Assembly (NCBI GenBank): GCA_003693705.1
Contig: RBZT01000328.1
Location: forward strand, 36,510-100,509
Direction: 5' to 3'
Source of the DNA: Polymyxa betae A26-41
Lineage: Eukaryota > Protista > Endomyxa: Phytomyxea
DNA: 64,000 bases
The position numbers and the translations under genes are program-made. Below are positions 30,858 to 46,307 of this stretch, one piece after another. Under the pieces are notes generated by a model that worked only from the letters and a program-made list of their open reading frames with translations, was not told the origin of the DNA and did no database searches. Positions within the stretch are counted from its first letter, which is position 1. Each line of letters begins with the position of its first letter.

Positions 30858-31322
30858 ATGGCGACCACCTTTACGAAACAGATTGTGACGCAAGGATCTG
30901 GACCAACACCCAGGCCGCATCAGAAGGTGACAGTGGCTGCCGACCTGTATCTAGCCGCCGATAACACGGCCATCTGGAGCACCCATCAGCCTGCTGTATA
31001 ATTAGTGTCTCGGTATAGCCCGGCAATTCTGACGTTCATTAGGGATTCTTGTTTCCAGCCAAGAATGGCCATCAACCGTTTACGTACGAAGCGGGTGTTG
31101 GTACTGTCGTCCCGGGGTCAGATCGTTTTGTAATTAGCATCGTGTACTTCGAGTTACCCCTTCTTTAGGTGGGAGGATGGCGTTGCATCCATGCAATTGG
31201 GAGAGAAAGCTCGCCTTCACATCCCTTGGCAGTACGCATACGGTGCCAATGGTCATCCGGGATTTAAAATTCCTCCAAAAGCTGACCTCATCTTTGAGAT
31301 TACTGTCATGAACATTCAATGA
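30858..31322 (+). CDS. FKBP12-type peptidyl-prolyl isomerase, absent from the ORF track
   Basis: Spliced translation MATTFTKQIVTQGSGPTP...IWSTH...VVPGWEDGVASMQLGEKARLHIPWQYAYGANGHPGFKIPPKADLIFEI. Confidence 0.9.
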
Positions 31323-31417
31323 ATTGGCAAGCAATTTTCATGCAAAATATGCCTTTATTTTCACGCTTAAGATACTAAGAGGAACACAAATTGCGGTCAA
31401 GAAGGAAGTCGTTAAAT

Positions 31418-34194
31418 CTAGATATCGACGATAACGTAGGCATCTGTTCGCTCGGGTTGTTCATTGACTTGTAAGCTGGCTAGCGTAATGGCCTTGATCT
31501 CGGTCCCGGACTCATGTTTCTGAGCATTGTAAGGCTCACCATGCCCAACTGCATACAGCCGGTACAGCCCATCCTGATCGATAGTGATCTGCTTAACGTC
31601 AACCCGCTTGCAGATGATCTGCTTGCGTGTGCTGAACCGGAACAAGAGTTCATCCAAGAATTTGTAGAGAAGATCCTTGTCGTCTTCGCCAATAACCTAT
31701 AAAACGAAAGTCAGCTTTTAAAAAGTGATCCTTGGAATCCATACTTCAAATACGAAATCATATTGAGGTTCAATTTGCACTTTTCCAGTATTGGCCAGAT
31801 AATTGAACATACAGTCGGCCATATTCCCAAATGCCTCTAACTTTGTAGGGCCCCATGAATGGAATTGAATATCTGCGGGATGTGGCAGATCTACAAAACA
31901 ACCACCGCTTAACATATCGCTTAAACGGTTATATCTTCAGTCAATTACATTCGTATTGAACATGGCGACCACTTTCAGCTCCGACTCCAATAACTTCATT
32001 CTTGGTTTCTGAGAGCAATGTGAGATCGATCCTTGAGTGAGAATAAAGCACTACCAACCGAATGAGGCGGCGCCAGGTTGTTTTCCCTTTTCCTGCTTTA
32101 GCGGCGCCTCGGTGCGTTCATGGAAACCCTCGCGAGGAAATTGCATCTTGGCGAACTCGGAAGTCAATCCACCCATATTTGATATTGGTATCGCTTCGCC
32201 TTGGACTGACGCCGTCTCGCTACCGAATCGCCCAGTTGATGGACCACGCTCAGCAGATGTCTGGTCTGGGAGACGCTCCTGTTGCAAACGCTGTTCTCGA
32301 TTTGATTCACCAAACGACGGCTCGCCTTGCGTGAACGCCTGTTGTTGAGGTTGCTGCTTGCTATCTGGTGGCCGCTGTTGTCGACCTTCAGGCCCTTTAT
32401 ACCCTTCACCCTGTGCGTAGAATATATCGCCCTGGTTCGAAGGTTGCTGACCACGTTCTTCACCCGAGATCGGTTGTGAAGAGCGCTCTGGAGAAGTTGG
32501 GGCGGGTTCAACAGTCGAAATTAGCACGTCCAGTTTGTTCGCTTGCTGTTCACCTAGGAATCCTGTTCCACGTTCGTGAACCTCTTGAAGTTCCGGAGCC
32601 GATGATCGCCTTTGCTGTTCTCCTAATTTTTTAGGAAACTGTTCCGATTCGCCAGCGACGGGAATGTCGGTGGTGACTTGTTCCTCTTGAGTAGTTTTGC
32701 CAGTTCCGCTTTGTTCCGGTCCTGTTGCGGATGGCGGACGGTCAGGTTGTTCCTCTGTTAGTTCCTGACGATATTCTGGGCCTTGTTGTTCGCTAGGTTT
32801 GCGAGGAGCTTGCTCCTCATCGCCAGCGATCGGAATCTCCTTCCCCGGCTGTGACTTTCGCTGACTTTCAACTATACGGGTGGGCTCCGGACGTGGCACC
32901 TGTTTTGAGCCTCTCGCGGCCGACTCTGCAGTTCGAGTGCCAGATTGTCCCTGAGCTAGTCCTGCAGGACGCTTCTGATCAAATGCTCCAATCTGACCGG
33001 ATCCCAATTCTTTCTCGGAAGGTGCCGATGGTTCCGCCGATTCTCCATACCCATTGAAACGCTCCCCAGCTTGGTCGCGAGACAAATCTGTAGGGCGCTG
33101 CTGTTGTTCAAATGCGCCAACCTGATCGGACCCCATTTCTTTCTCGGAAGGTGCCGAAGGTTCCGCCGATTCTCCATACCCCTTGAAATGCTCCCCAGCT
33201 TGCTCGCGAGACAAATCTGTACGGCGCTGCTGTTGTCTAAACGCTGCAACTGGACTGAATCCCAGGTTTCTCTCAGAGGGTACCGATGGGGCCGTCGGTT
33301 CGCCAGCTTCCTCATCACGTTTTCCAGCTTGACCTTGGGCCATACCTGTAGGGTGTTGCTGTTTGAAGGTGCCGGTCTGGCCAGCTCCGAATTCTTTCTC
33401 AGATGGCGCCGATGGTGCAACTGGTTCGCCAGATCTCTCAAACCGTTGGTAGGTTTGAGGGCCAGATTTCGCTTGTTCATCAGGGACGAACCGCTGCTGG
33501 GTTATTGGACGCCCCCCAAAAGCCAGAGGCTCGGAAACGCCTGGCTCTTGCTGATTCGTAGTTTGCTGTAGCCCTTCTCTACCCATACCTGCGCCACCGA
33601 CTGGCTCAGGGCGCCCTTCACGATAGGCCGTCTGTTCCCGCTCGGGCTCCTCACGATATTTCTGTTGCTGGGCCTGCTCGCGATCAGCATCGGCCTGCTC
33701 CGCTATCGATCGAGCTGCTGTTCCTTCGGCAGGCCCTGCGGATGGTACTGGCTCGCCGCCTCCGACCAGCGGCTCTGCCATTTCAGCGACAGATGGAATA
33801 TCACCGCCATGTTGAGTCTGACTACTACGTGTACTAGACTGAGGCTCCGCTGCTTCTGCCATTGATGGAACATCTTCATATCTCTCAGTTTGTTTTAATC
33901 CGCCTCGAGTCCCTTCGTCAGCAGCTTCGGCCATAGAACGCAGGCCTTCACCGCTTTGGCGTCCTTCAGAAACAGGTTTTTCTGCTTGTTCAGACATCAT
34001 TTGGAGATTAGGCTGGTCAGGTTTTACACCAGCTCCGGGTTGGGAACTAAAGTCCTGGAAAGTGTCAGCGAAGGTGGGCAAATGTCGATTGGACAACTTA
34101 CTGGTTTCGTTGAGATTTGCTCCGAAGGCACCTGTAATGCCTGGGCTCTCTCTCGCTCAGAAGACGAGCTCATTTTGCTTTGATGACTTCCCAT
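31418..34194 (-). CDS. Archease fused to a ~700-aa disordered repeat N-terminus with N-myristoylation motif (about 857 aa)
   Basis: Exons 34194-34102, 34054-32059, 32008-31949, 31890-31745 and 31696-31418 joined by 47, 50, 58 and 48 nt GT-AG introns give one 2574-nt ORF; archease motifs YEYLPHPADIQFHSWG, LLYKFLDELLF, GTEIKAIT, terminal VIVDI. Confidence 0.8.
32940..33430 (-). repeat. Coding tandem repeat, about 4 x 126-129 bp (42-43 aa)
   Basis: GESAEPSAPSEKExGSxQxGAFxQ...QAGExFxGY units in ORF 32051..34096. Confidence 0.9.
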
Positions 34195-35174
34195 CATTTC
34201 TCTCACCAGATCGTTCTAGCGTTTGATGACAGAGATAGCGTTGATTTCATTCAAAAACAATGAAATTCTTGTCACGCGTTCTGAGTGGATTTTTCACCGT
34301 TCCGATAAATTGATTACTTGGTCTCCATCCATTCGAGTCCACACTTTGCTGCTTCATCGATGAAGTCTTTGCTATCTGAACTTTTCTGCTGCCTCCCAAG
34401 TTGCGACTGCAGATCTGTTGAAGGTAAAACCAAATGACAAAACTGGTAATATTCGAGAGAATGCAGAGTCTTGTACTTTTGGTCATTCGTTGGATTGTTT
34501 GTGACTACTTATTTCTGTGAGTTTTCGATATAAAAAAGTGGTTTATGCTTTACGCAGATGGTGACAAATGGTAGTGAATGGTTTTTCAAGTGTATGCATC
34601 ATCGTCTGATTTAACCATGATATGGAACAGATGCTTGATCACCATCAACCGTCAGCTGTAGCCGTCTCGACTGCAATCATCATGACAGAGGTCAAACGAT
34701 ACGCCATGGCGGTGACAGCGATGGCTGGCTTCGTTGGATATCGGACGAACCAGACAGGATTTACACGGATCAGGCTACAGATGAAGCTGATGATGAAATG
34801 AAGAGAAACCTCAAAAAAAAGAAACACAAAACACAAAAAAACCTAGTCGAATTTGCATTTCGATGTAAAGCGCTTTAAATCTTTCAAAGCTTCTCGGGAG
34901 GTGTTTTAAACGAGTACCACAAACAGGGAGTTTGAAGCGCTTCGAAATTTTTGCGGAACGTCAATTTGGTTACTTTTGAAACGTTTGAAAGCAGAGCCTG
35001 GAAGCAGCGGAATACGCGACTTTGATGGCCACCTATTGCCTATTGGCTAGTGTTAGCAAACGTAGAAAACATTACAGGGCTTACGCCAGGAGAGAATGTT
35101 GTTTAATGGTGGCGCGTGGTTCGGTGGTTTAACTGGCCTACGCCATTCATGACGCAAACCATCAACCGGTAAAT

Positions 35175-35420
35175 ATGTCGTGTCGATGCTCATCACGAAT
35201 TCGGGCGTCAACTCCATCATTATGGATTGACAGCAGCAACGAAGTCGTTGATTACGACAGCGACATGCTCAGTGCTCTGGGCAACGCGAGTAGCAAGTCT
35301 TTGGACAAACGTTGCTGTGACAAACCGATAGATTCGCTGCCGAAGGGCCAATCATTGCCGGCGCAGAAACAGGCTGAAATCCATAGAATACGACGTTATT
35401 TATTGGAACAGAACAAATAG
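35175..35420 (+). CDS. Hypothetical protein (81 aa)
   Basis: ATG-started intronless ORF; no family recognised. Confidence 0.3.
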   Translation: MSCRCSSRIRASTPSLWIDSSNEVVDYDSDMLSALGNASSKSLDKRCCDKPIDSLPKGQSLPAQKQAEIHRIRRYLLEQNK

Positions 35421-36146
35421 AAAAAGGCATTTTCAAAATGACTCGAACTCGTAATGGCGAACTTCGCGAAACCGAATGGTCGCGCTCTCGCAGGTGTTAA
35501 ACGTGGCCTTTGACAACGGTCTGGACTGAAGACCAGCGGCCGATGCATTTTAGCCTGACGATTGACAATCTTTGCAGGCGACCAGCCGCTCCCGCCATCT
35601 CTTCATAGTTCGCCAATCGACGCCGGACTGATGACCGACCAGATAGAGCATCCCTGGTTGTGCCAACGCCTCGTTGACGATATTAATACGACACGGACTG
35701 CTGCGACCCATGATGGAATGATGATCGGAGATCCTCCATACATAAATCCCTCGCGACGTCCGCTTCAATCGGGCGCCAAATTTCACTGGAAACCCAGCAA
35801 AGCAATTGATCGTTTATGGCTGAAATCTGGCTCAGAATCCGAATTTGTCGTCCACTGTCTAACTACGTTAGCCGGATATTGGGAATCGATCTCAAAATGC
35901 ATTTGATTCTTTGCCCGAGAACCGAGACTAATCGGCTCCCCTCCGGATGCCGTGGCGGCATGAAATGAATTGCGACATTGACCCGCGCGATTTTATCGGG
36001 TCGCTGAGGATCTCTTCGAAGAATCCTGGCGGGTCCAGGAACTCGTCCTCATACCTGAATTGGAAATCGTATTGATTAGTGAGCGTTGTTGTGCCTTCTC
36101 TCGTTGAGATCGTCCATCAATGTTTATGCGTGACTGCGTGTCTGTA

Positions 36147-38128
36147 ATGACATCCTCATATATTGGCATTATCGTTATAGGTTTGCTATCATCTGTAGCG
36201 GCTCTCACCGAAATCAACTTCGAGATCAAACATATTCCAAGCAGCTGGAAGTCCGGGTTCGCGCTCGAAGTAGTACTGGAAGGACGATGCGAAACCAGGT
36301 TGTCGAGCAAGGGTTCGGGTCGCCATGGACCGGAGCCGCTCTGGTCGCACGTCTACTCGAGCAGTTCGATTAGTAAATCGAAAGATGCACTATCTGGGAA
36401 ATTTTCCATTGAAGAGTGCGATTTCACGTCGTATATTCGTGTTGAGATTCTGCGAAATCGTGGTTCACTCTTGTGCCATCGAGAAGAGGTTTTTGCAACA
36501 TCGCGGATTCTAACGTCGCGTTTGTTGAAGCCGGATACGTTTTACTTTGAAAGCGCCGATAATGCCATTATTCACGGGAAGAAATCCATTCCTACCCAGA
36601 TATCGATGTGCCCTGGCTCAAGCTCAATCCCCATCCTTGATGAACCCGATTCCAAAAGACTGCTGTTCATGACTCGAGGAACCCGAGGTGACGTCCAGCC
36701 GTTTGTTGCATCTGCAAGGGAACTGGCTGAACGATACGGCTTTCATGTCACCATTTGTACGGAATCCACCTTCCAGAACTTCATCGAAGGCAACAGTCGT
36801 GTTCGGCGAGGAAGTATCGAGTTTGTACCGTCGGGAGGCAATACAGCCGAGCGCATCAAGGGGACGGCAGCTTCAATATTCATTGATGCCAATTGCGCAG
36901 CTGTTCAAGCCTTTATGATGTCTCGTGCTGAAATCGAATTCTTCGAATCAGAGCCCGTTTTCTATGAGACTGCACGACGCCTCCGTCCTCGTGCTATTGT
37001 TTATGGGTTTATTTTAACATCTTTGGCGACTGTCGTCTCTGAATCTCTTCGTATCCCTATTGTTGGGTTCATTCTTCAGCCTACAATTTTGCCTTCCAGA
37101 GATCATGATCCAGTCATTCCAATCCCTGATTATCATGATGAGGCTTGTAGCAAAGAGCTCATCGCTAGTCTGCGCGCGCTCTCGAAAGGGATTTTCAGCA
37201 TTCGACGACGACGAGGTTTGTGTCCACTGAACAAGCTCTATGATCCTTGGGACTATTTGATGAGACAAAGATCGCCCATGGTGGTTCCCATTCCCACCAT
37301 GGCCTTCGGTAAACGTCCAAGTGATTGGCCTGATGCGATCATGATGACCGATTTTATCTATCTCAATGATGCCCATCATGCTGAATTGTCTCCCGAACTG
37401 GAAGCATTCTTATCCATTGGTGGTGACCGCCCCGTCTTGGCAATCGCCTTCTCCAGCATGCCTGTCAGCAAATCCACAATGAATGATCTGATTCTCTCGA
37501 TCGCATCCAAAAGTTCCACCCAGCCACGAATCATCCTAGTTGGAAAATCGCCCTCTCTGGAGGCTTCATCAAAATCGGTGGAAGAGAAGCTGGAATCGCT
37601 CAGACAGTCGAATCAGTTAATTGAAGTCAGCAGTGCACCGTTTAATCTTCTCTTCCAAGAATCTCTGCTGCTGTCATTCATGGTGGTTTAGGAACAACAG
37701 CAGAAGCAATCAAGGCTGGGTTACCTGTGATTGTTACTGGTACATTACTGATGGATCAGCGATTCTGGGGCGAACGAATCCGTGTCTTAGGGATGGGACC
37801 TTCCATGATATCCATCAGCAAGTTTCTGGAGTCAGCTCCCTCTGTAATCGATGCTCTCTTCGAGCCAGAGGCGTTCGCATCCTACAAACTCAATGCTGAA
37901 CAGTTATCATTGAGTCTGAGGGAGCAGAACTCAGGGGATGCATCGGACGCTCTGGCTTCTGCTATCGTCTCGGCACTTCCTGTCGATTTCGTCAATGTTA
38001 AATTCCAGTTAGTCGGGATGCTCGAAGCGACTACGTTTGTGCTTCGAGCCATTGCAGGCTTATCTTTATCTGCCCTGAACCATGCTTTTCGTGGTTTATC
38101 TGACTCGGTTTTATTCAGATTGCACTAA
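36147..38128 (+). pseudogene. GT1 sterol 3-beta-glucosyltransferase-like glycosyltransferase with 1-nt frameshift (pseudogene or assembly error)
   Basis: TRGTRGDVQPF N-domain motif; at ~37656 TTC CA AGA lacks one base of expected F-P-R; other frame continues ISAAVIHGGLGTTAEAIKAGLP...DQRFWG; intronless. Confidence 0.8.
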
Positions 38129-43102: not shown

Positions 43103-43663
43103 TTATAAGAAGAACGCGATCATCAAGGTAGCACCAATCAAGCTGATAGTGACAGCAGAATAATTAGCGCTAGATGTCGCTGGCTGAGAACCTGAGTCCG
43201 TTGCAGAGCCAGATGCAGGCGAAGCCTTCTCTACATTCAGGACTCCGGCCGTCGTCGGTGCTGGCGTGCTGACGACCGTAGTGGGGGCGAACGTCAAGGG
43301 ATTGTTTCCGTTGAAAGGCACAGGAACATTACGAATACCACAATAACCCATAGTTTCAGGATCTTGGCTGCAAAAGTATTCTCCTGGCTGACCTGGATGT
43401 TGACAATCGGAATCTCTTATGCATGCGGTCCTGTTATCGCCATCATAGAAGATGCCTTTTTTTTCTTGGGCGCAAGCATCAGCACGAGTGAAGAAGTCAG
43501 AGCAAAATCCATAATGAGAGCAGCACTCGGGCAATTCAGATGGCGGGCATTCCGCCCATCCATGGTATGGACCACAGCGTAATCCTTCTATTTCCTGGCC
43601 CTTTGCCTGATCGATTGCAATTGGGACCAGTATTGCTAGAGCTACTGCTTGAAACAAAGTCAT
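43103..43663 (-). CDS. Secreted chitin-binding (CBM18/hevein-like) protein, probably GPI-anchored
   Basis: Signal peptide; RCGPYHGWAECP...CCSHYGFC; second Cys motif; Ser/Thr-rich stalk; hydrophobic C-terminus. Confidence 0.8.
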   Translation of the reverse strand: MTLFQAVALAILVPIAIDQAKGQEIEGLRCGPYHGWAECPPSELPECCSHYGFCSDFFTRADACAQEKKGIFYDGDNRTACIRDSDCQHPGQPGEYFCSQDPETMGYCGIRNVPVPFNGNNPLTFAPTTVVSTPAPTTAGVLNVEKASPASGSATDSGSQPATSSANYSAVTISLIGATLMIAFFL

Positions 43664-44733: not shown

Positions 44734-46307
44734 ATGGTTCGTCGCGAGTGGGAACAAGAGGTTGATTATTTAACATTAGGCCAAGGCACAGATGGCGTTG
44801 TGAATTACATTAAGAAAGGATTCGTGCCTAATATGCGAGTCCCTGGTATTTTCTACGCCAATGATGCCATCCGTCCCATGTTATTAGATGAATTACGAAG
44901 TCAATCCGGTCCTGGATCAGGACGAGGTGGGTTTCTGCCTGCTTTAAGGCAAATCGCCAATGTGGCTTCACTACCTGGGATCCAGAAATACTCCATCGGT
45001 TTACCTGATTGCCATGCTGGTTACGGATTCGCAATTGGCAATGTTGCTGCCATGGACATGGAAGATCCAGAAGCTGTTGTATCACCGGGTGGTGTTGGGT
45101 TTGATATATGCTGTGGAGTTAGACTAATCAGGACCAATCTGAGCGCTGATGATATAGCTCCTTATGTCCAGCAACTCACTAACAAGCTGTACGAACTGAT
45201 TCCGGTTGGAGTCGGCAGACGAATTGGAGTTCCTATTGAAATGTCAGATTTGAACGAGATCTTGAAGAATGGAATGGCTTGGGCTGTAAAGCACGGTTAC
45301 GCCACCCAACATGATCGAGAACATATCGAAGAACATGGGTGTGTTCCTGGTGCTGACCCAGATAATGTATCCGGTCGAGCCAAAGAAAGAGGTCTTTATC
45401 AATTAGGCACATTAGGGGCAGGAAACCATTACTGTGAAGTTCAGAAAGTGCAGAAAATTTATGATGTCGAGGCTTGTCACGCTATGGGAATCAATGATGT
45501 TGATCAGATCTGTATTATGATTCACAGCGGATCACGAGGATTAGGGCATCAAGTCTGTACTGATTATATTCAGTCTATGAGACCGTTCAGAACGAAATAT
45601 AACCTCAACGATCAGCAGCTAACATGTGCACCAATCAAATCCAGTCAAGGAGAAAAGTATCTGGTCAGAAATCGGAAACTTCCTACTCTCAGTAATTGAT
45701 CTTATTTTAGTCGGCATTAGCAGCAGCTAGCAATTTTGCATTCTGCAATCGCTCAGCAATGACGACGATGGTTCGTCGAGCTTTTTACTCAGTCCTCGAC
45801 CGATCCGAGCGCGAGATGGAAATGAGAGTGATATACGATGTCGCTCACAATACAGCCAAAGTAGAAACTCATACGATTGATGGTCGGGATCGACAACTGT
45901 TAGTTCATCGCAAAGGAGCTACACGAGCATTCCCTCCTGGACATCCAAATAATCCCCACGATTATATGAACATCGGCCAGCCTGTTCTTGTTGGCGGTTC
46001 CATGGGTTCTGCATCGTATGTTTTAACAGGTACAGATTATGGAATGGAGACGACATTTGGCAGTACCTGTCATGGAGCTGGCCGTCTCTTAAGTCGACAT
46101 CAGGCTCGCAATGCTATCAAGTCTCGCGATACATTGGCCGGCCTGAAAGCAAAGGGAGTTACGATTAAGGTCGGCAACGCGAAGTTGGTCTCTGAAGAAG
46201 ATGTCGGCTCCTACAAAGACGTCGATGAAGTCGTCAACAGTTGCGAATCGGCGAAAATCTCGAAGCGAGCCGCTCGCTTGGTTCCGGTCGCTGTGATTAA
46301 AGGCTGA
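44734..46307 (+). CDS. RTCB: RNA-splicing ligase RtcB (508 aa, one intron 45664-45710)
   Basis: KKGFVPNM, PGGVGFDICCGVRL, LGAGNHY, IHSGSRGLGH, YDVAHN, HRKGATRA, STCHGAGR, terminal VIKG. Confidence 0.97.

What the first reader, a model, noticed from the sequence alone, without database searches (positions are those of the whole stretch)
31418..34197. Giant archease: RtcB cofactor fused to a myristoylation motif and ~700-aa disordered repeat tether
Seen: the exon upstream of the archease core (32008-31949) has no in-frame ATG. A canonical 50-nt intron (32058-32009, donor GTTGGT, acceptor CTCAG) joins it in frame to the 681-aa Q/E/P/G-rich ORF, and a 47-nt GTAAGT intron joins that to a first exon starting (M)MGSHQSK. 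The spliced ORF is 2574 nt (857 aa). Established: archeases are normally standalone proteins of about 140-170 aa that promote RtcB guanylylation, and MGxxxS/K is the N-myristoylation consensus. Inference: a membrane-anchored or condensate-forming archease that localises RNA ligation. I know of no described archease with this architecture. Myristoylation needs initiation at the second of two adjacent ATGs, which has the better context (-3 A, +4 G).
Basis: partly seen in the sequence, partly recalled or inferred. Interest (0 to 1): 0.9.

Follow-up and report, generated by a model that had tools for sequence, protein, structure and literature searches.

The report
Giant archease in a root parasite
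In the sugar-beet root parasite Polymyxa betae and its soil relatives, archease, the normally tiny helper that switches on the RNA-joining enzyme RtcB, carries a conserved 700-residue floppy arm with a probable lipid tag, which suggests that these cells control where RNA ligation is switched on.

Summary
Confirmed. The genome is Polymyxa betae (size and contig count match RBZT01). The five-exon model is open (857/858 aa). RNA contigs show all four introns spliced, and the key 50-nt junction appears in three separate studies. It is the only archease found in the assembly, and the essential residues (human D51, K156, D178, terminal I179) are kept. An intronless 844-aa homologue from another organism has the same layout; at least two further lineages carry long extensions. 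They form one clade among plasmodiophorid archeases, whereas Plasmodiophora brassicae has two short ones. The arm is predicted disordered and is under purifying selection (dN/dS about 0.2-0.4). It keeps short motifs: an N-terminal MG-x3-S (12 of the first 16 residues identical), S-x-A-E-x-A-E repeats, P[S/T]AP, and an export-signal-like stretch. Best reading: a working RtcB activator whose arm keeps it in the cytoplasm and loosely at membranes. Myristoylation and location are inferred, not shown; there is no second membrane signal, so 'anchored' overstates it. RtcB lies 10.5 kb away, and both P. brassicae archeases adjoin an RtcB gene. I found no description in the papers searched; the scan had no earlier report on other DNA.

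The parts
34102..34197 (-). Exon 1 coding part (32 codons), starts ATG ATG GGA; an in-frame stop lies just upstream (about 34216-34218)
   Evidence: X2 contig 34101-34241 reads through the upstream stop and joins across intron 1
34150..34197 (-). Conserved N-terminal 16 residues, MMG-x-x-Q-S-x-M-SSSS-x-R-E; myristoylation-type G2/S6 if translation starts at the second Met; a third in-frame Met at residue 9
   Evidence: 12/16 identical to P0001, next 16 residues only 2/16; motif in 1 of 177 Met-starting archease sequences in hand, and that one is P0001
34055..34101 (-). Intron 1, 47 nt, GTAAGT..CAG
   Evidence: X2; X4 as a net 47-nt loss
32059..34054 (-). Exon 2, 1996 nt: low-complexity disordered arm (71% Q/E/G/S/P/A/R, net charge -32, no Cys, no Trp)
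   Evidence: 46% identity over 268 aa to P0001; homologue predicted disordered; all listed indels in other strains keep the frame
33689..33937 (-). Four S-[MVI]-A-E-x-A-[ED] motifs (three in each homologue); the last opens the only predicted helix of the arm; other strains show a 96-nt in-frame duplication here
32979..33415 (-). Repeat family of about 43 aa, each unit with a P[S/T]AP motif (four copies: 33415, 33298, 33160, 33031); includes the 129-nt tandem at 32979-33236
   Evidence: homologues keep one or two P[S/T]AP; about a 5% chance of one copy by composition
32402..32422 (-). Conserved FYAQGEG motif, function not assigned
32138..32176 (-). Conserved hydrophobic pattern (L-x3-F-x2-M-x-F) that fits a class 1a CRM1 export-signal consensus
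   Evidence: pattern in 4 of 5 sequences at the same place, last position Cys in P0001; 15-19% chance of one match per full arm; consensus from my own knowledge
32009..32058 (-). Intron 2, 50 nt, GTTGGT..CTCAG; joins the arm to the archease exons
   Evidence: spliced in RNA runs X1, X3, X4
31949..32008 (-). Exon 3, 60 nt: linker and first strand of archease
31745..31890 (-). Exon 4: archease N-terminal half, LPHPAD; Asp at 31871-31873 matches human metal ligand D51
31418..31696 (-). Exon 5: archease C-terminal half; GTEIKAIT (human K156) and terminal V-D-I-stop (human D178, I179 carboxylate)
   Evidence: X4 changes the stop TAG to TAA
44734..46307 (+). RtcB ligase gene, the only one found in the assembly, 10.5 kb away and divergently oriented; the presumed partner

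Best explanation
This is the single, essential-type archease of Polymyxa betae, made as one 857/858-aa protein. Its C-terminal 155 residues fold as ordinary archease and should bring the third metal ion and the lysine that allow RtcB to be guanylylated. The C-terminus has to stay free because its carboxylate binds metal, so any addition must be N-terminal. An ancestor of a Polymyxa-like clade lengthened the N-terminus by repeated in-frame duplication into a disordered arm with short binding motifs. The arm most likely acts as an address label: ribosomes that start at the second Met make a myristoylated form that binds membranes weakly and reversibly, and size plus an export-like signal keep the protein in the cytoplasm. 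RtcB would then be recharged at a set cytoplasmic or membrane site rather than by a freely diffusing 16-20 kDa factor. SHOWN: gene structure, splicing, conservation, selection, intact catalytic residues, fold of the homologue. INFERRED: activity, start choice, lipid, export signal, location. The gene model alone deserves about 0.97; the confidence given is for the whole reading.
For: Splicing in three studies. Only archease in the assembly. Intronless 844-aa homologue starting MMGGGQS. Further long members in at least two more lineages. Clade support 100/97 inside the plasmodiophorid group. Arm dN/dS about 0.18 (window vs L011, residues 53-245) and 0.42 (P0001 vs L011, whole arm), against about 0.09 for exon 5. 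First 16 residues 12/16 identical while synonymous sites are near saturation. N-myristoyltransferase present. IRE1-type RNase domain present, so membrane-side ligation is a plausible task. Essential residues as in PMC10944509. Model of P0001: core pLDDT above 90, rmsd 1.8 A to human archease bound to RTCB, arm mostly under 50.
Against: Only two full N-termini are known. If translation starts at the first Met, the second Met should block exposure of Gly (general knowledge of methionine aminopeptidase). There is no second membrane signal. The short motifs have 5-19% chance rates. Between close strains the arm changes almost freely: 10 silent and 16 replacement codons among the listed X4 differences. 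A purely cytoplasmic activator must still serve tRNA splicing, whose site in this organism is unknown.
Confidence: 0.55

Rival explanations
1. The arm is mostly tolerated baggage or a plain spacer: it grew by repeat expansion and is kept in frame only because the start codon lies in front of it.
For: Rapid turnover of repeats, indels and replacement changes between strains. Many eukaryotic archeases carry low-complexity N-terminal tails (median 72 residues in this sample). P. brassicae manages with short archeases.
Against: dN/dS well below 1. Islands of identity (AEMAE..VGGGEP, FYAQGEG, N-terminal 16-mer) survive near-saturated synonymous change. Overall length is kept at about 700 residues in three lineages.
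Confidence: 0.15
2. The arm is a scaffold or regulator of the ligase complex rather than a membrane label: its repeated motifs bind RtcB or other subunits, raise local concentration, and may stand in for missing animal-type subunits.
For: Archease-RTCB binding is transient (PMC10944509). Repeated conserved motifs and one confident helix. FAM98 was not detected. Unstructured regions of FAM98A steer the animal complex to granules (PMC13247085).
Against: The FAM98 search had silent controls, so absence is not shown. It does not explain the conserved Gly/Ser N-terminus. No RtcB-arm contact was modelled.
Confidence: 0.2
3. The N-terminal lipid and P[S/T]AP repeats recruit ESCRT-I (Vps23/TSG101), as in retroviral Gag or ARRDC1, and send archease to endosomes or released vesicles.
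For: Four P[S/T]AP copies here and one or two at matching repeats in homologues. A UEV-domain gene is present. Myristoyl plus P[S/T]AP is the known pairing (my own knowledge).
Against: The four copies come from one duplicated unit with about a 5% chance rate. Several homologous units have lost the motif. No PPxY or convincing YPxL.
Confidence: 0.07
4. Two products: the long form is minor, and a short archease arises from an internal promoter or internal Met near the end of exon 2.
For: In-frame Met codons exist near 32176 and 32144; a Met at the second position is conserved. Contigs cannot show transcript starts.
Against: X4 depth is even across exon 2 and the core. No other joints or loose ends. 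Homologue contigs of 2.0-2.7 kb run through the whole arm.
Confidence: 0.03

Closest known systems
Human archease (ZBTB8OS; PDB 8BTX, 8ODO, 8ODP; PMC10944509)
   Same: Fold (rmsd 1.8 A over 143 columns for the homologue model), D51/K156/D178/I179 equivalents, free C-terminus, co-occurs with a eukaryote-type RtcB.
   Different: 179 aa against 857. No long arm or lipid motif. LDHTAD is LPHPAD here.
Plasmodiophora brassicae archeases (CEO98777.1, 156 aa; second copy on CP145414.1)
   Same: Same plasmodiophorid clade (98/95 and 100/99), LPH motif, same two intron positions in the core, RtcB gene nearby.
   Different: Short N-terminus, no match to the arm at either locus, two RtcB-archease pairs each within about 160 bp, HTAD kept.
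Prokaryotic rtcB-archease operon (Pyrococcus horikoshii; PMC3973293)
   Same: Genes for the ligase and its activator are physically linked.
   Different: Here they are separate spliced genes 10.5 kb apart in opposite directions, with other genes between; no shared transcript is implied. The prokaryotic archease is 16 kDa.
FAM98A/B and Ashwin targeting subunits of the animal tRNA ligase complex (PMC13247085)
   Same: Functional analogy: unstructured regions set where ligation happens.
   Different: Unrelated in sequence; in animals the address sits on stable subunits, not on the transient activator.

Membership tests
Archease (PF01951) | Profile match above the curated cut-off | tested here: met
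   Exon 5 76.4 bits, exon 4 37.1 bits, cut-off 25
Archease (PF01951) | Metal ligands D51, D178 and terminal carboxylate of I179; phosphate-binding K156 | tested here: met
   HPAD, GTEIKAIT, VDI-stop
Archease (PF01951) | Arrowhead archease fold | tested here: met
   Tested on homologue P0001, not on the joined window protein: pLDDT above 90, Foldseek E 7.9e-15 to 8ODP
Archease (PF01951) | Small stand-alone protein of about 16-20 kDa (typical, not defining) | tested here: not met
   857/858 aa; about 700 residues before the core against a median of 72 and nearly all under 160 in other sampled archeases
Archease (PF01951) | Promotes RtcB guanylylation and turnover | not testable with these tools
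   Needs a biochemical assay
N-myristoylated proteins | Gly after the initiator Met, allowed residue 3, Ser/Thr at 6 | tested here: inconclusive
   Met only if translation starts at the second ATG; pattern conserved in P0001
N-myristoylated proteins | N-myristoyltransferase in the organism | tested here: met
   PF01233 E 2e-49
Stably membrane-anchored myristoyl proteins (two-signal type) | Nearby palmitoylated Cys or basic cluster | tested here: not met
   No Cys in exons 1-2, no basic cluster, acidic arm
Gene fusion of two pre-existing genes | The arm exists as a separate gene elsewhere | tested here: inconclusive
   No paralogue in the genome, no stand-alone homologue, no Pfam or Atlas match, nothing at the P. 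brassicae loci; fast-evolving disordered sequence is easily missed

The most novel reading that the evidence does not exclude
A clade of plant-root parasites has turned the diffusible activator of RtcB into a lipid-tagged, tethered scaffold with switchable starts (Met1, Met2, Met9). It confines multi-turnover RNA ligation to a membrane compartment, possibly through ESCRT-binding P[S/T]AP repeats to endosomes or vesicles. That would be a new way of controlling where RNA ligation or repair happens.
Probability: 0.15. Interest if true: 0.85.

Novelty: new variant of a known kind. Interest (0 to 1): 0.62.

Why it matters
Archease is described as a small, transiently binding activator (16 kDa in prokaryotes, 179 aa in people), and how the RtcB ligase is directed to different places in the cell is an active question (PMC13247085). 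A natural archease five times the usual size, with a conserved targeting-type N-terminus and intact catalytic tip, gives a direct test of whether the activator itself can set the site and rate of ligation: compare full-length, arm-less and Gly-to-Ala forms, with the short P. brassicae protein as control. It also gives a lineage marker inside the plasmodiophorids, a correct gene model for a crop-virus vector, and a case of rtcB-archease linkage kept in eukaryotes.

Tried and rejected
1) Two separate genes wrongly joined: rejected by junction-spanning RNA contigs and an intronless full-length homologue. 2) Archease starting at ATGs near 32000 or 31963: wrong frame, no donor of the right phase. 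3) Pseudogene: stops in homologue contigs L011 and L015 sit at different codons, and each is a sense codon in the 99.8%-identical sister contig, so they are most likely assembly errors. 4) A true RtcB-archease fusion in P. brassicae (P0155, 687 aa): RtcB ends at its normal stop just before the archease exons, so this is most likely an annotation join. 5) HPAD as a sign of lost function: Pro at that place occurs in 14 of 85 sampled archeases, and LPH is shared with P. brassicae. 6) Origin of the arm: no hit in Pfam, the ESM Atlas, the own genome or the protein collection beyond P0001. 7) The metagenome contig scan returned only the two contigs already known. 8) FAM98 and Trl1-type ligase searches were blank with silent controls, so uninformative; one search used a wrong family by mistake. 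9) The bacterial promoter scan is not meaningful here. 10) No paper links archease with Plasmodiophora or with myristoylation in the library searched.

Full report
Source. The assembly has 27,085,814 bases in 1001 contigs. The published Polymyxa betae draft RBZT01 has 1001 contigs and 27,085,946 bp (PMC6328671). I take the window to be P. betae, a plasmodiophorid root parasite of sugar beet. The short introns and the closeness of its genes to Plasmodiophora brassicae agree with this.

Observation. On the minus strand, five exons (34197-34102, 34054-32059, 32008-31949, 31890-31745, 31696-31418) separated by GT..AG introns of 47, 50, 58 and 48 nt give an open frame of 858 codons from the first ATG and 857 from the second. 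Exons 4 and 5 match Pfam Archease. The frame that runs into the archease core has no ATG of its own before a stop near 32120, and nearby ATGs in other frames have no donor of the right phase.

Splicing is shown in RNA. Four RNA assemblies from four studies were laid on 31100-35300. The 50-nt intron that joins the long exon to the archease exons is skipped in X1, X3 and X4. X1 has a contig with 591 nt of the long exon joined to exon 3. X4, a relative with several percent differences, has a 951-nt contig from 31335 to 32441 with three introns removed, and depth in every bin across the gene. Intron 1 is skipped in X2, whose contig reaches 34241 and so reads through the in-frame stop upstream of the two ATGs. 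All listed indels in the long exon keep the frame (3, 3, 3, 3 and 5+1+3 nt), as does a 96-nt duplication seen in three runs. Limits: these are contigs, so they show no starts or levels; two of the runs are only guessed to be RNA, though intron loss marks them as such; none spans the whole mRNA.

Conservation. A search with exon 5 alone returned as best hit an 844-aa protein, P0001 (78% identity). It is encoded without introns on a 2593-nt JGI contig, so it is a cDNA-like single record of the same layout. It starts MMGGGQS, and its arm is 46% identical to exon 2 over 268 residues (E 4e-54). Other long members are P0154/P0179/P0180 (one organism, contigs open at the 5' end, about 830-845 codons apart from single differing stops that look like assembly errors), P0002, and P0004/P0152 (at least 204 residues before the core, contig cut at the 5' end). 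In a tree of the exon-5 region these form a clade with the window gene (100/97), inside a plasmodiophorid clade (98/95) that also holds both P. brassicae archeases. P. brassicae's are short (156 aa; the second copy is also short). The likely sister lineage P0003 (96/78) sits before a FYVE gene like the window gene and has only 77- and 38-codon calls in the 1.1 kb upstream. That hints at a short form, but no DNA was available. Among the other sampled archeases, N-terminal extensions have a median of 72 residues and rarely exceed 160. So the arm is most likely a gain in one plasmodiophorid branch. The organisms behind the homologue contigs are not named.

The arm. It is 71% Q/E/G/S/P/A/R, acidic, with no Cys or Trp, and scores as unfolded throughout. 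AlphaFold2 on P0001 gives pLDDT below 50 for most of residues 1-693, one helix at 138-161, and a core above 90 that matches human archease bound to RTCB at 1.8 A. The arm is under purifying but relaxed selection: dN/dS is about 0.18 for residues 53-245 (window vs L011, near saturation, so rough) and 0.42 over the whole arm (P0001 vs L011), against about 0.09 for exon 5. Among the listed differences of X4, the arm has 10 silent and 16 replacement codons and no stop. Conserved islands are the N-terminal 16 residues (12/16 identical, then 2/16), three or four S-x-A-E-x-A-E motifs, a repeat of about 43 residues carrying P[S/T]AP, FYAQGEG, GRFG, and an L-x3-F-x2-M-x-F stretch close to the core. No separate gene with this sequence was found, so growth by internal duplication fits better than fusion.

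The core. Human archease uses D51, D178 and the carboxylate of the last residue I179 to hold a third Mn ion, and K156 to bind phosphate; D51A and K156A abolish RTCB guanylylation (PMC10944509). All four are kept here. This is the only archease found in the assembly, and the only RtcB lies 10.5 kb away in the same window. The need for a free C-terminus explains why the addition is N-terminal (inference). LPHPAD differs from the usual LDHTAD, but LPH is shared with P. brassicae and HPAD occurs in 14 of 85 sampled sequences, so it is no sign of a dead protein.

Mechanism. The most likely reading is an active RtcB activator with an address label. From the second Met, both known N-termini read G-x-x-Q-S, which fits the myristoylation consensus (my own knowledge of the pattern). 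None of the other 176 Met-starting archease sequences in hand fits it, and the genome encodes the transferase. In P0001 the first ATG has a pyrimidine at -3, which favours leaky scanning; in the window it has G at -3, so both starts may be used. A third conserved Met at residue 9 could give another unlipidated form. There is no Cys or basic cluster, so a myristate alone would give weak, reversible membrane binding or fit a protein pocket. The export-signal-like stretch and a size near 90 kDa would favour the cytoplasm. An IRE1-type RNase domain is present, so ligation beside the ER membrane is a plausible task, but I have no evidence for the substrate. Rivals are a scaffold for the ligase complex, a mostly neutral spacer, ESCRT recruitment through P[S/T]AP (UEV gene present; about a 5% chance rate), and a short isoform.

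Comparison and novelty. It is a member of the archease family by profile, residues and fold; activity is untested. It differs from described archeases in size and architecture. Searches of the paper library found nothing on archease in plasmodiophorids, with myristoylation, or with such an extension; subscription journals are largely outside that library. I rate it a new variant of a known kind. A related finding: both P. brassicae archease genes adjoin an RtcB gene (tail to tail, 160 bp apart; tandem), which echoes the prokaryotic operon (PMC3973293).

Method note. The joined protein was not used in any search, tree or fold; the natural full-length homologue P0001 served for those. No contig was taken for human, and no step needed referral.

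Noticed in passing
window 44734-46307 (+); L008:10001-12435; L010:10001-12446: RtcB and archease are linked in plasmodiophorids: 10.5 kb apart here. P. brassicae has two pairs, one tail to tail 160 bp apart and one in tandem. Operon-like linkage is known from prokaryotes.
   Followed up: partly
L010:11650-11960 (CP145414.1, XXQ34078.1): The 687-aa 'RtcB-archease fusion' in one P. brassicae annotation skips RtcB's normal stop codon and is most likely a gene-model error; the second archease has no separate entry among the hits seen.
   Followed up: yes
window about 45100-45125; L008; L010: All three plasmodiophorid RtcBs read GFDICCGVR where the usual motif is GFDINCGVR (recalled from memory): an extra Cys next to the oxidation-prone catalytic Cys.
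   Followed up: no
window 33877-33969: Three RNA runs show a 96-nt in-frame duplication absent from the reference: strain variation in copy number of the S-x-A-E-x-A-D unit, or a collapsed repeat in the assembly.
   Followed up: partly
window 30858-31322; L010:1979-2509: An FKBP gene lies next to archease here and 7.5 kb from the RtcB-archease pair in P. brassicae (tblastx E 4e-12); possibly conserved neighbourhood.
   Followed up: partly
window 34150-34197; P0005:1-12: The short P. brassicae N-terminus (Ser/Gln-rich, then K-E-R-R) loosely resembles the first 16 residues here, as if the arm was inserted behind an old N-terminus; low complexity makes this weak.
   Followed up: no
window 43103-43663 (-): 186-aa ORF with a signal-peptide-like start, a weak chitin-binding domain hit (E 0.001) and a hydrophobic end; possibly a GPI-anchored wall protein.
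   Followed up: no
window 36120-38128 (+): Glycosyltransferase (PF03033) split over two overlapping frames near 37620-37730.
   Followed up: no
P0106, P0130, P0168, P0170: A few other eukaryotic archeases are 317-445 aa (one from Symbiodinium natans), with different N-terminal additions.
   Followed up: no
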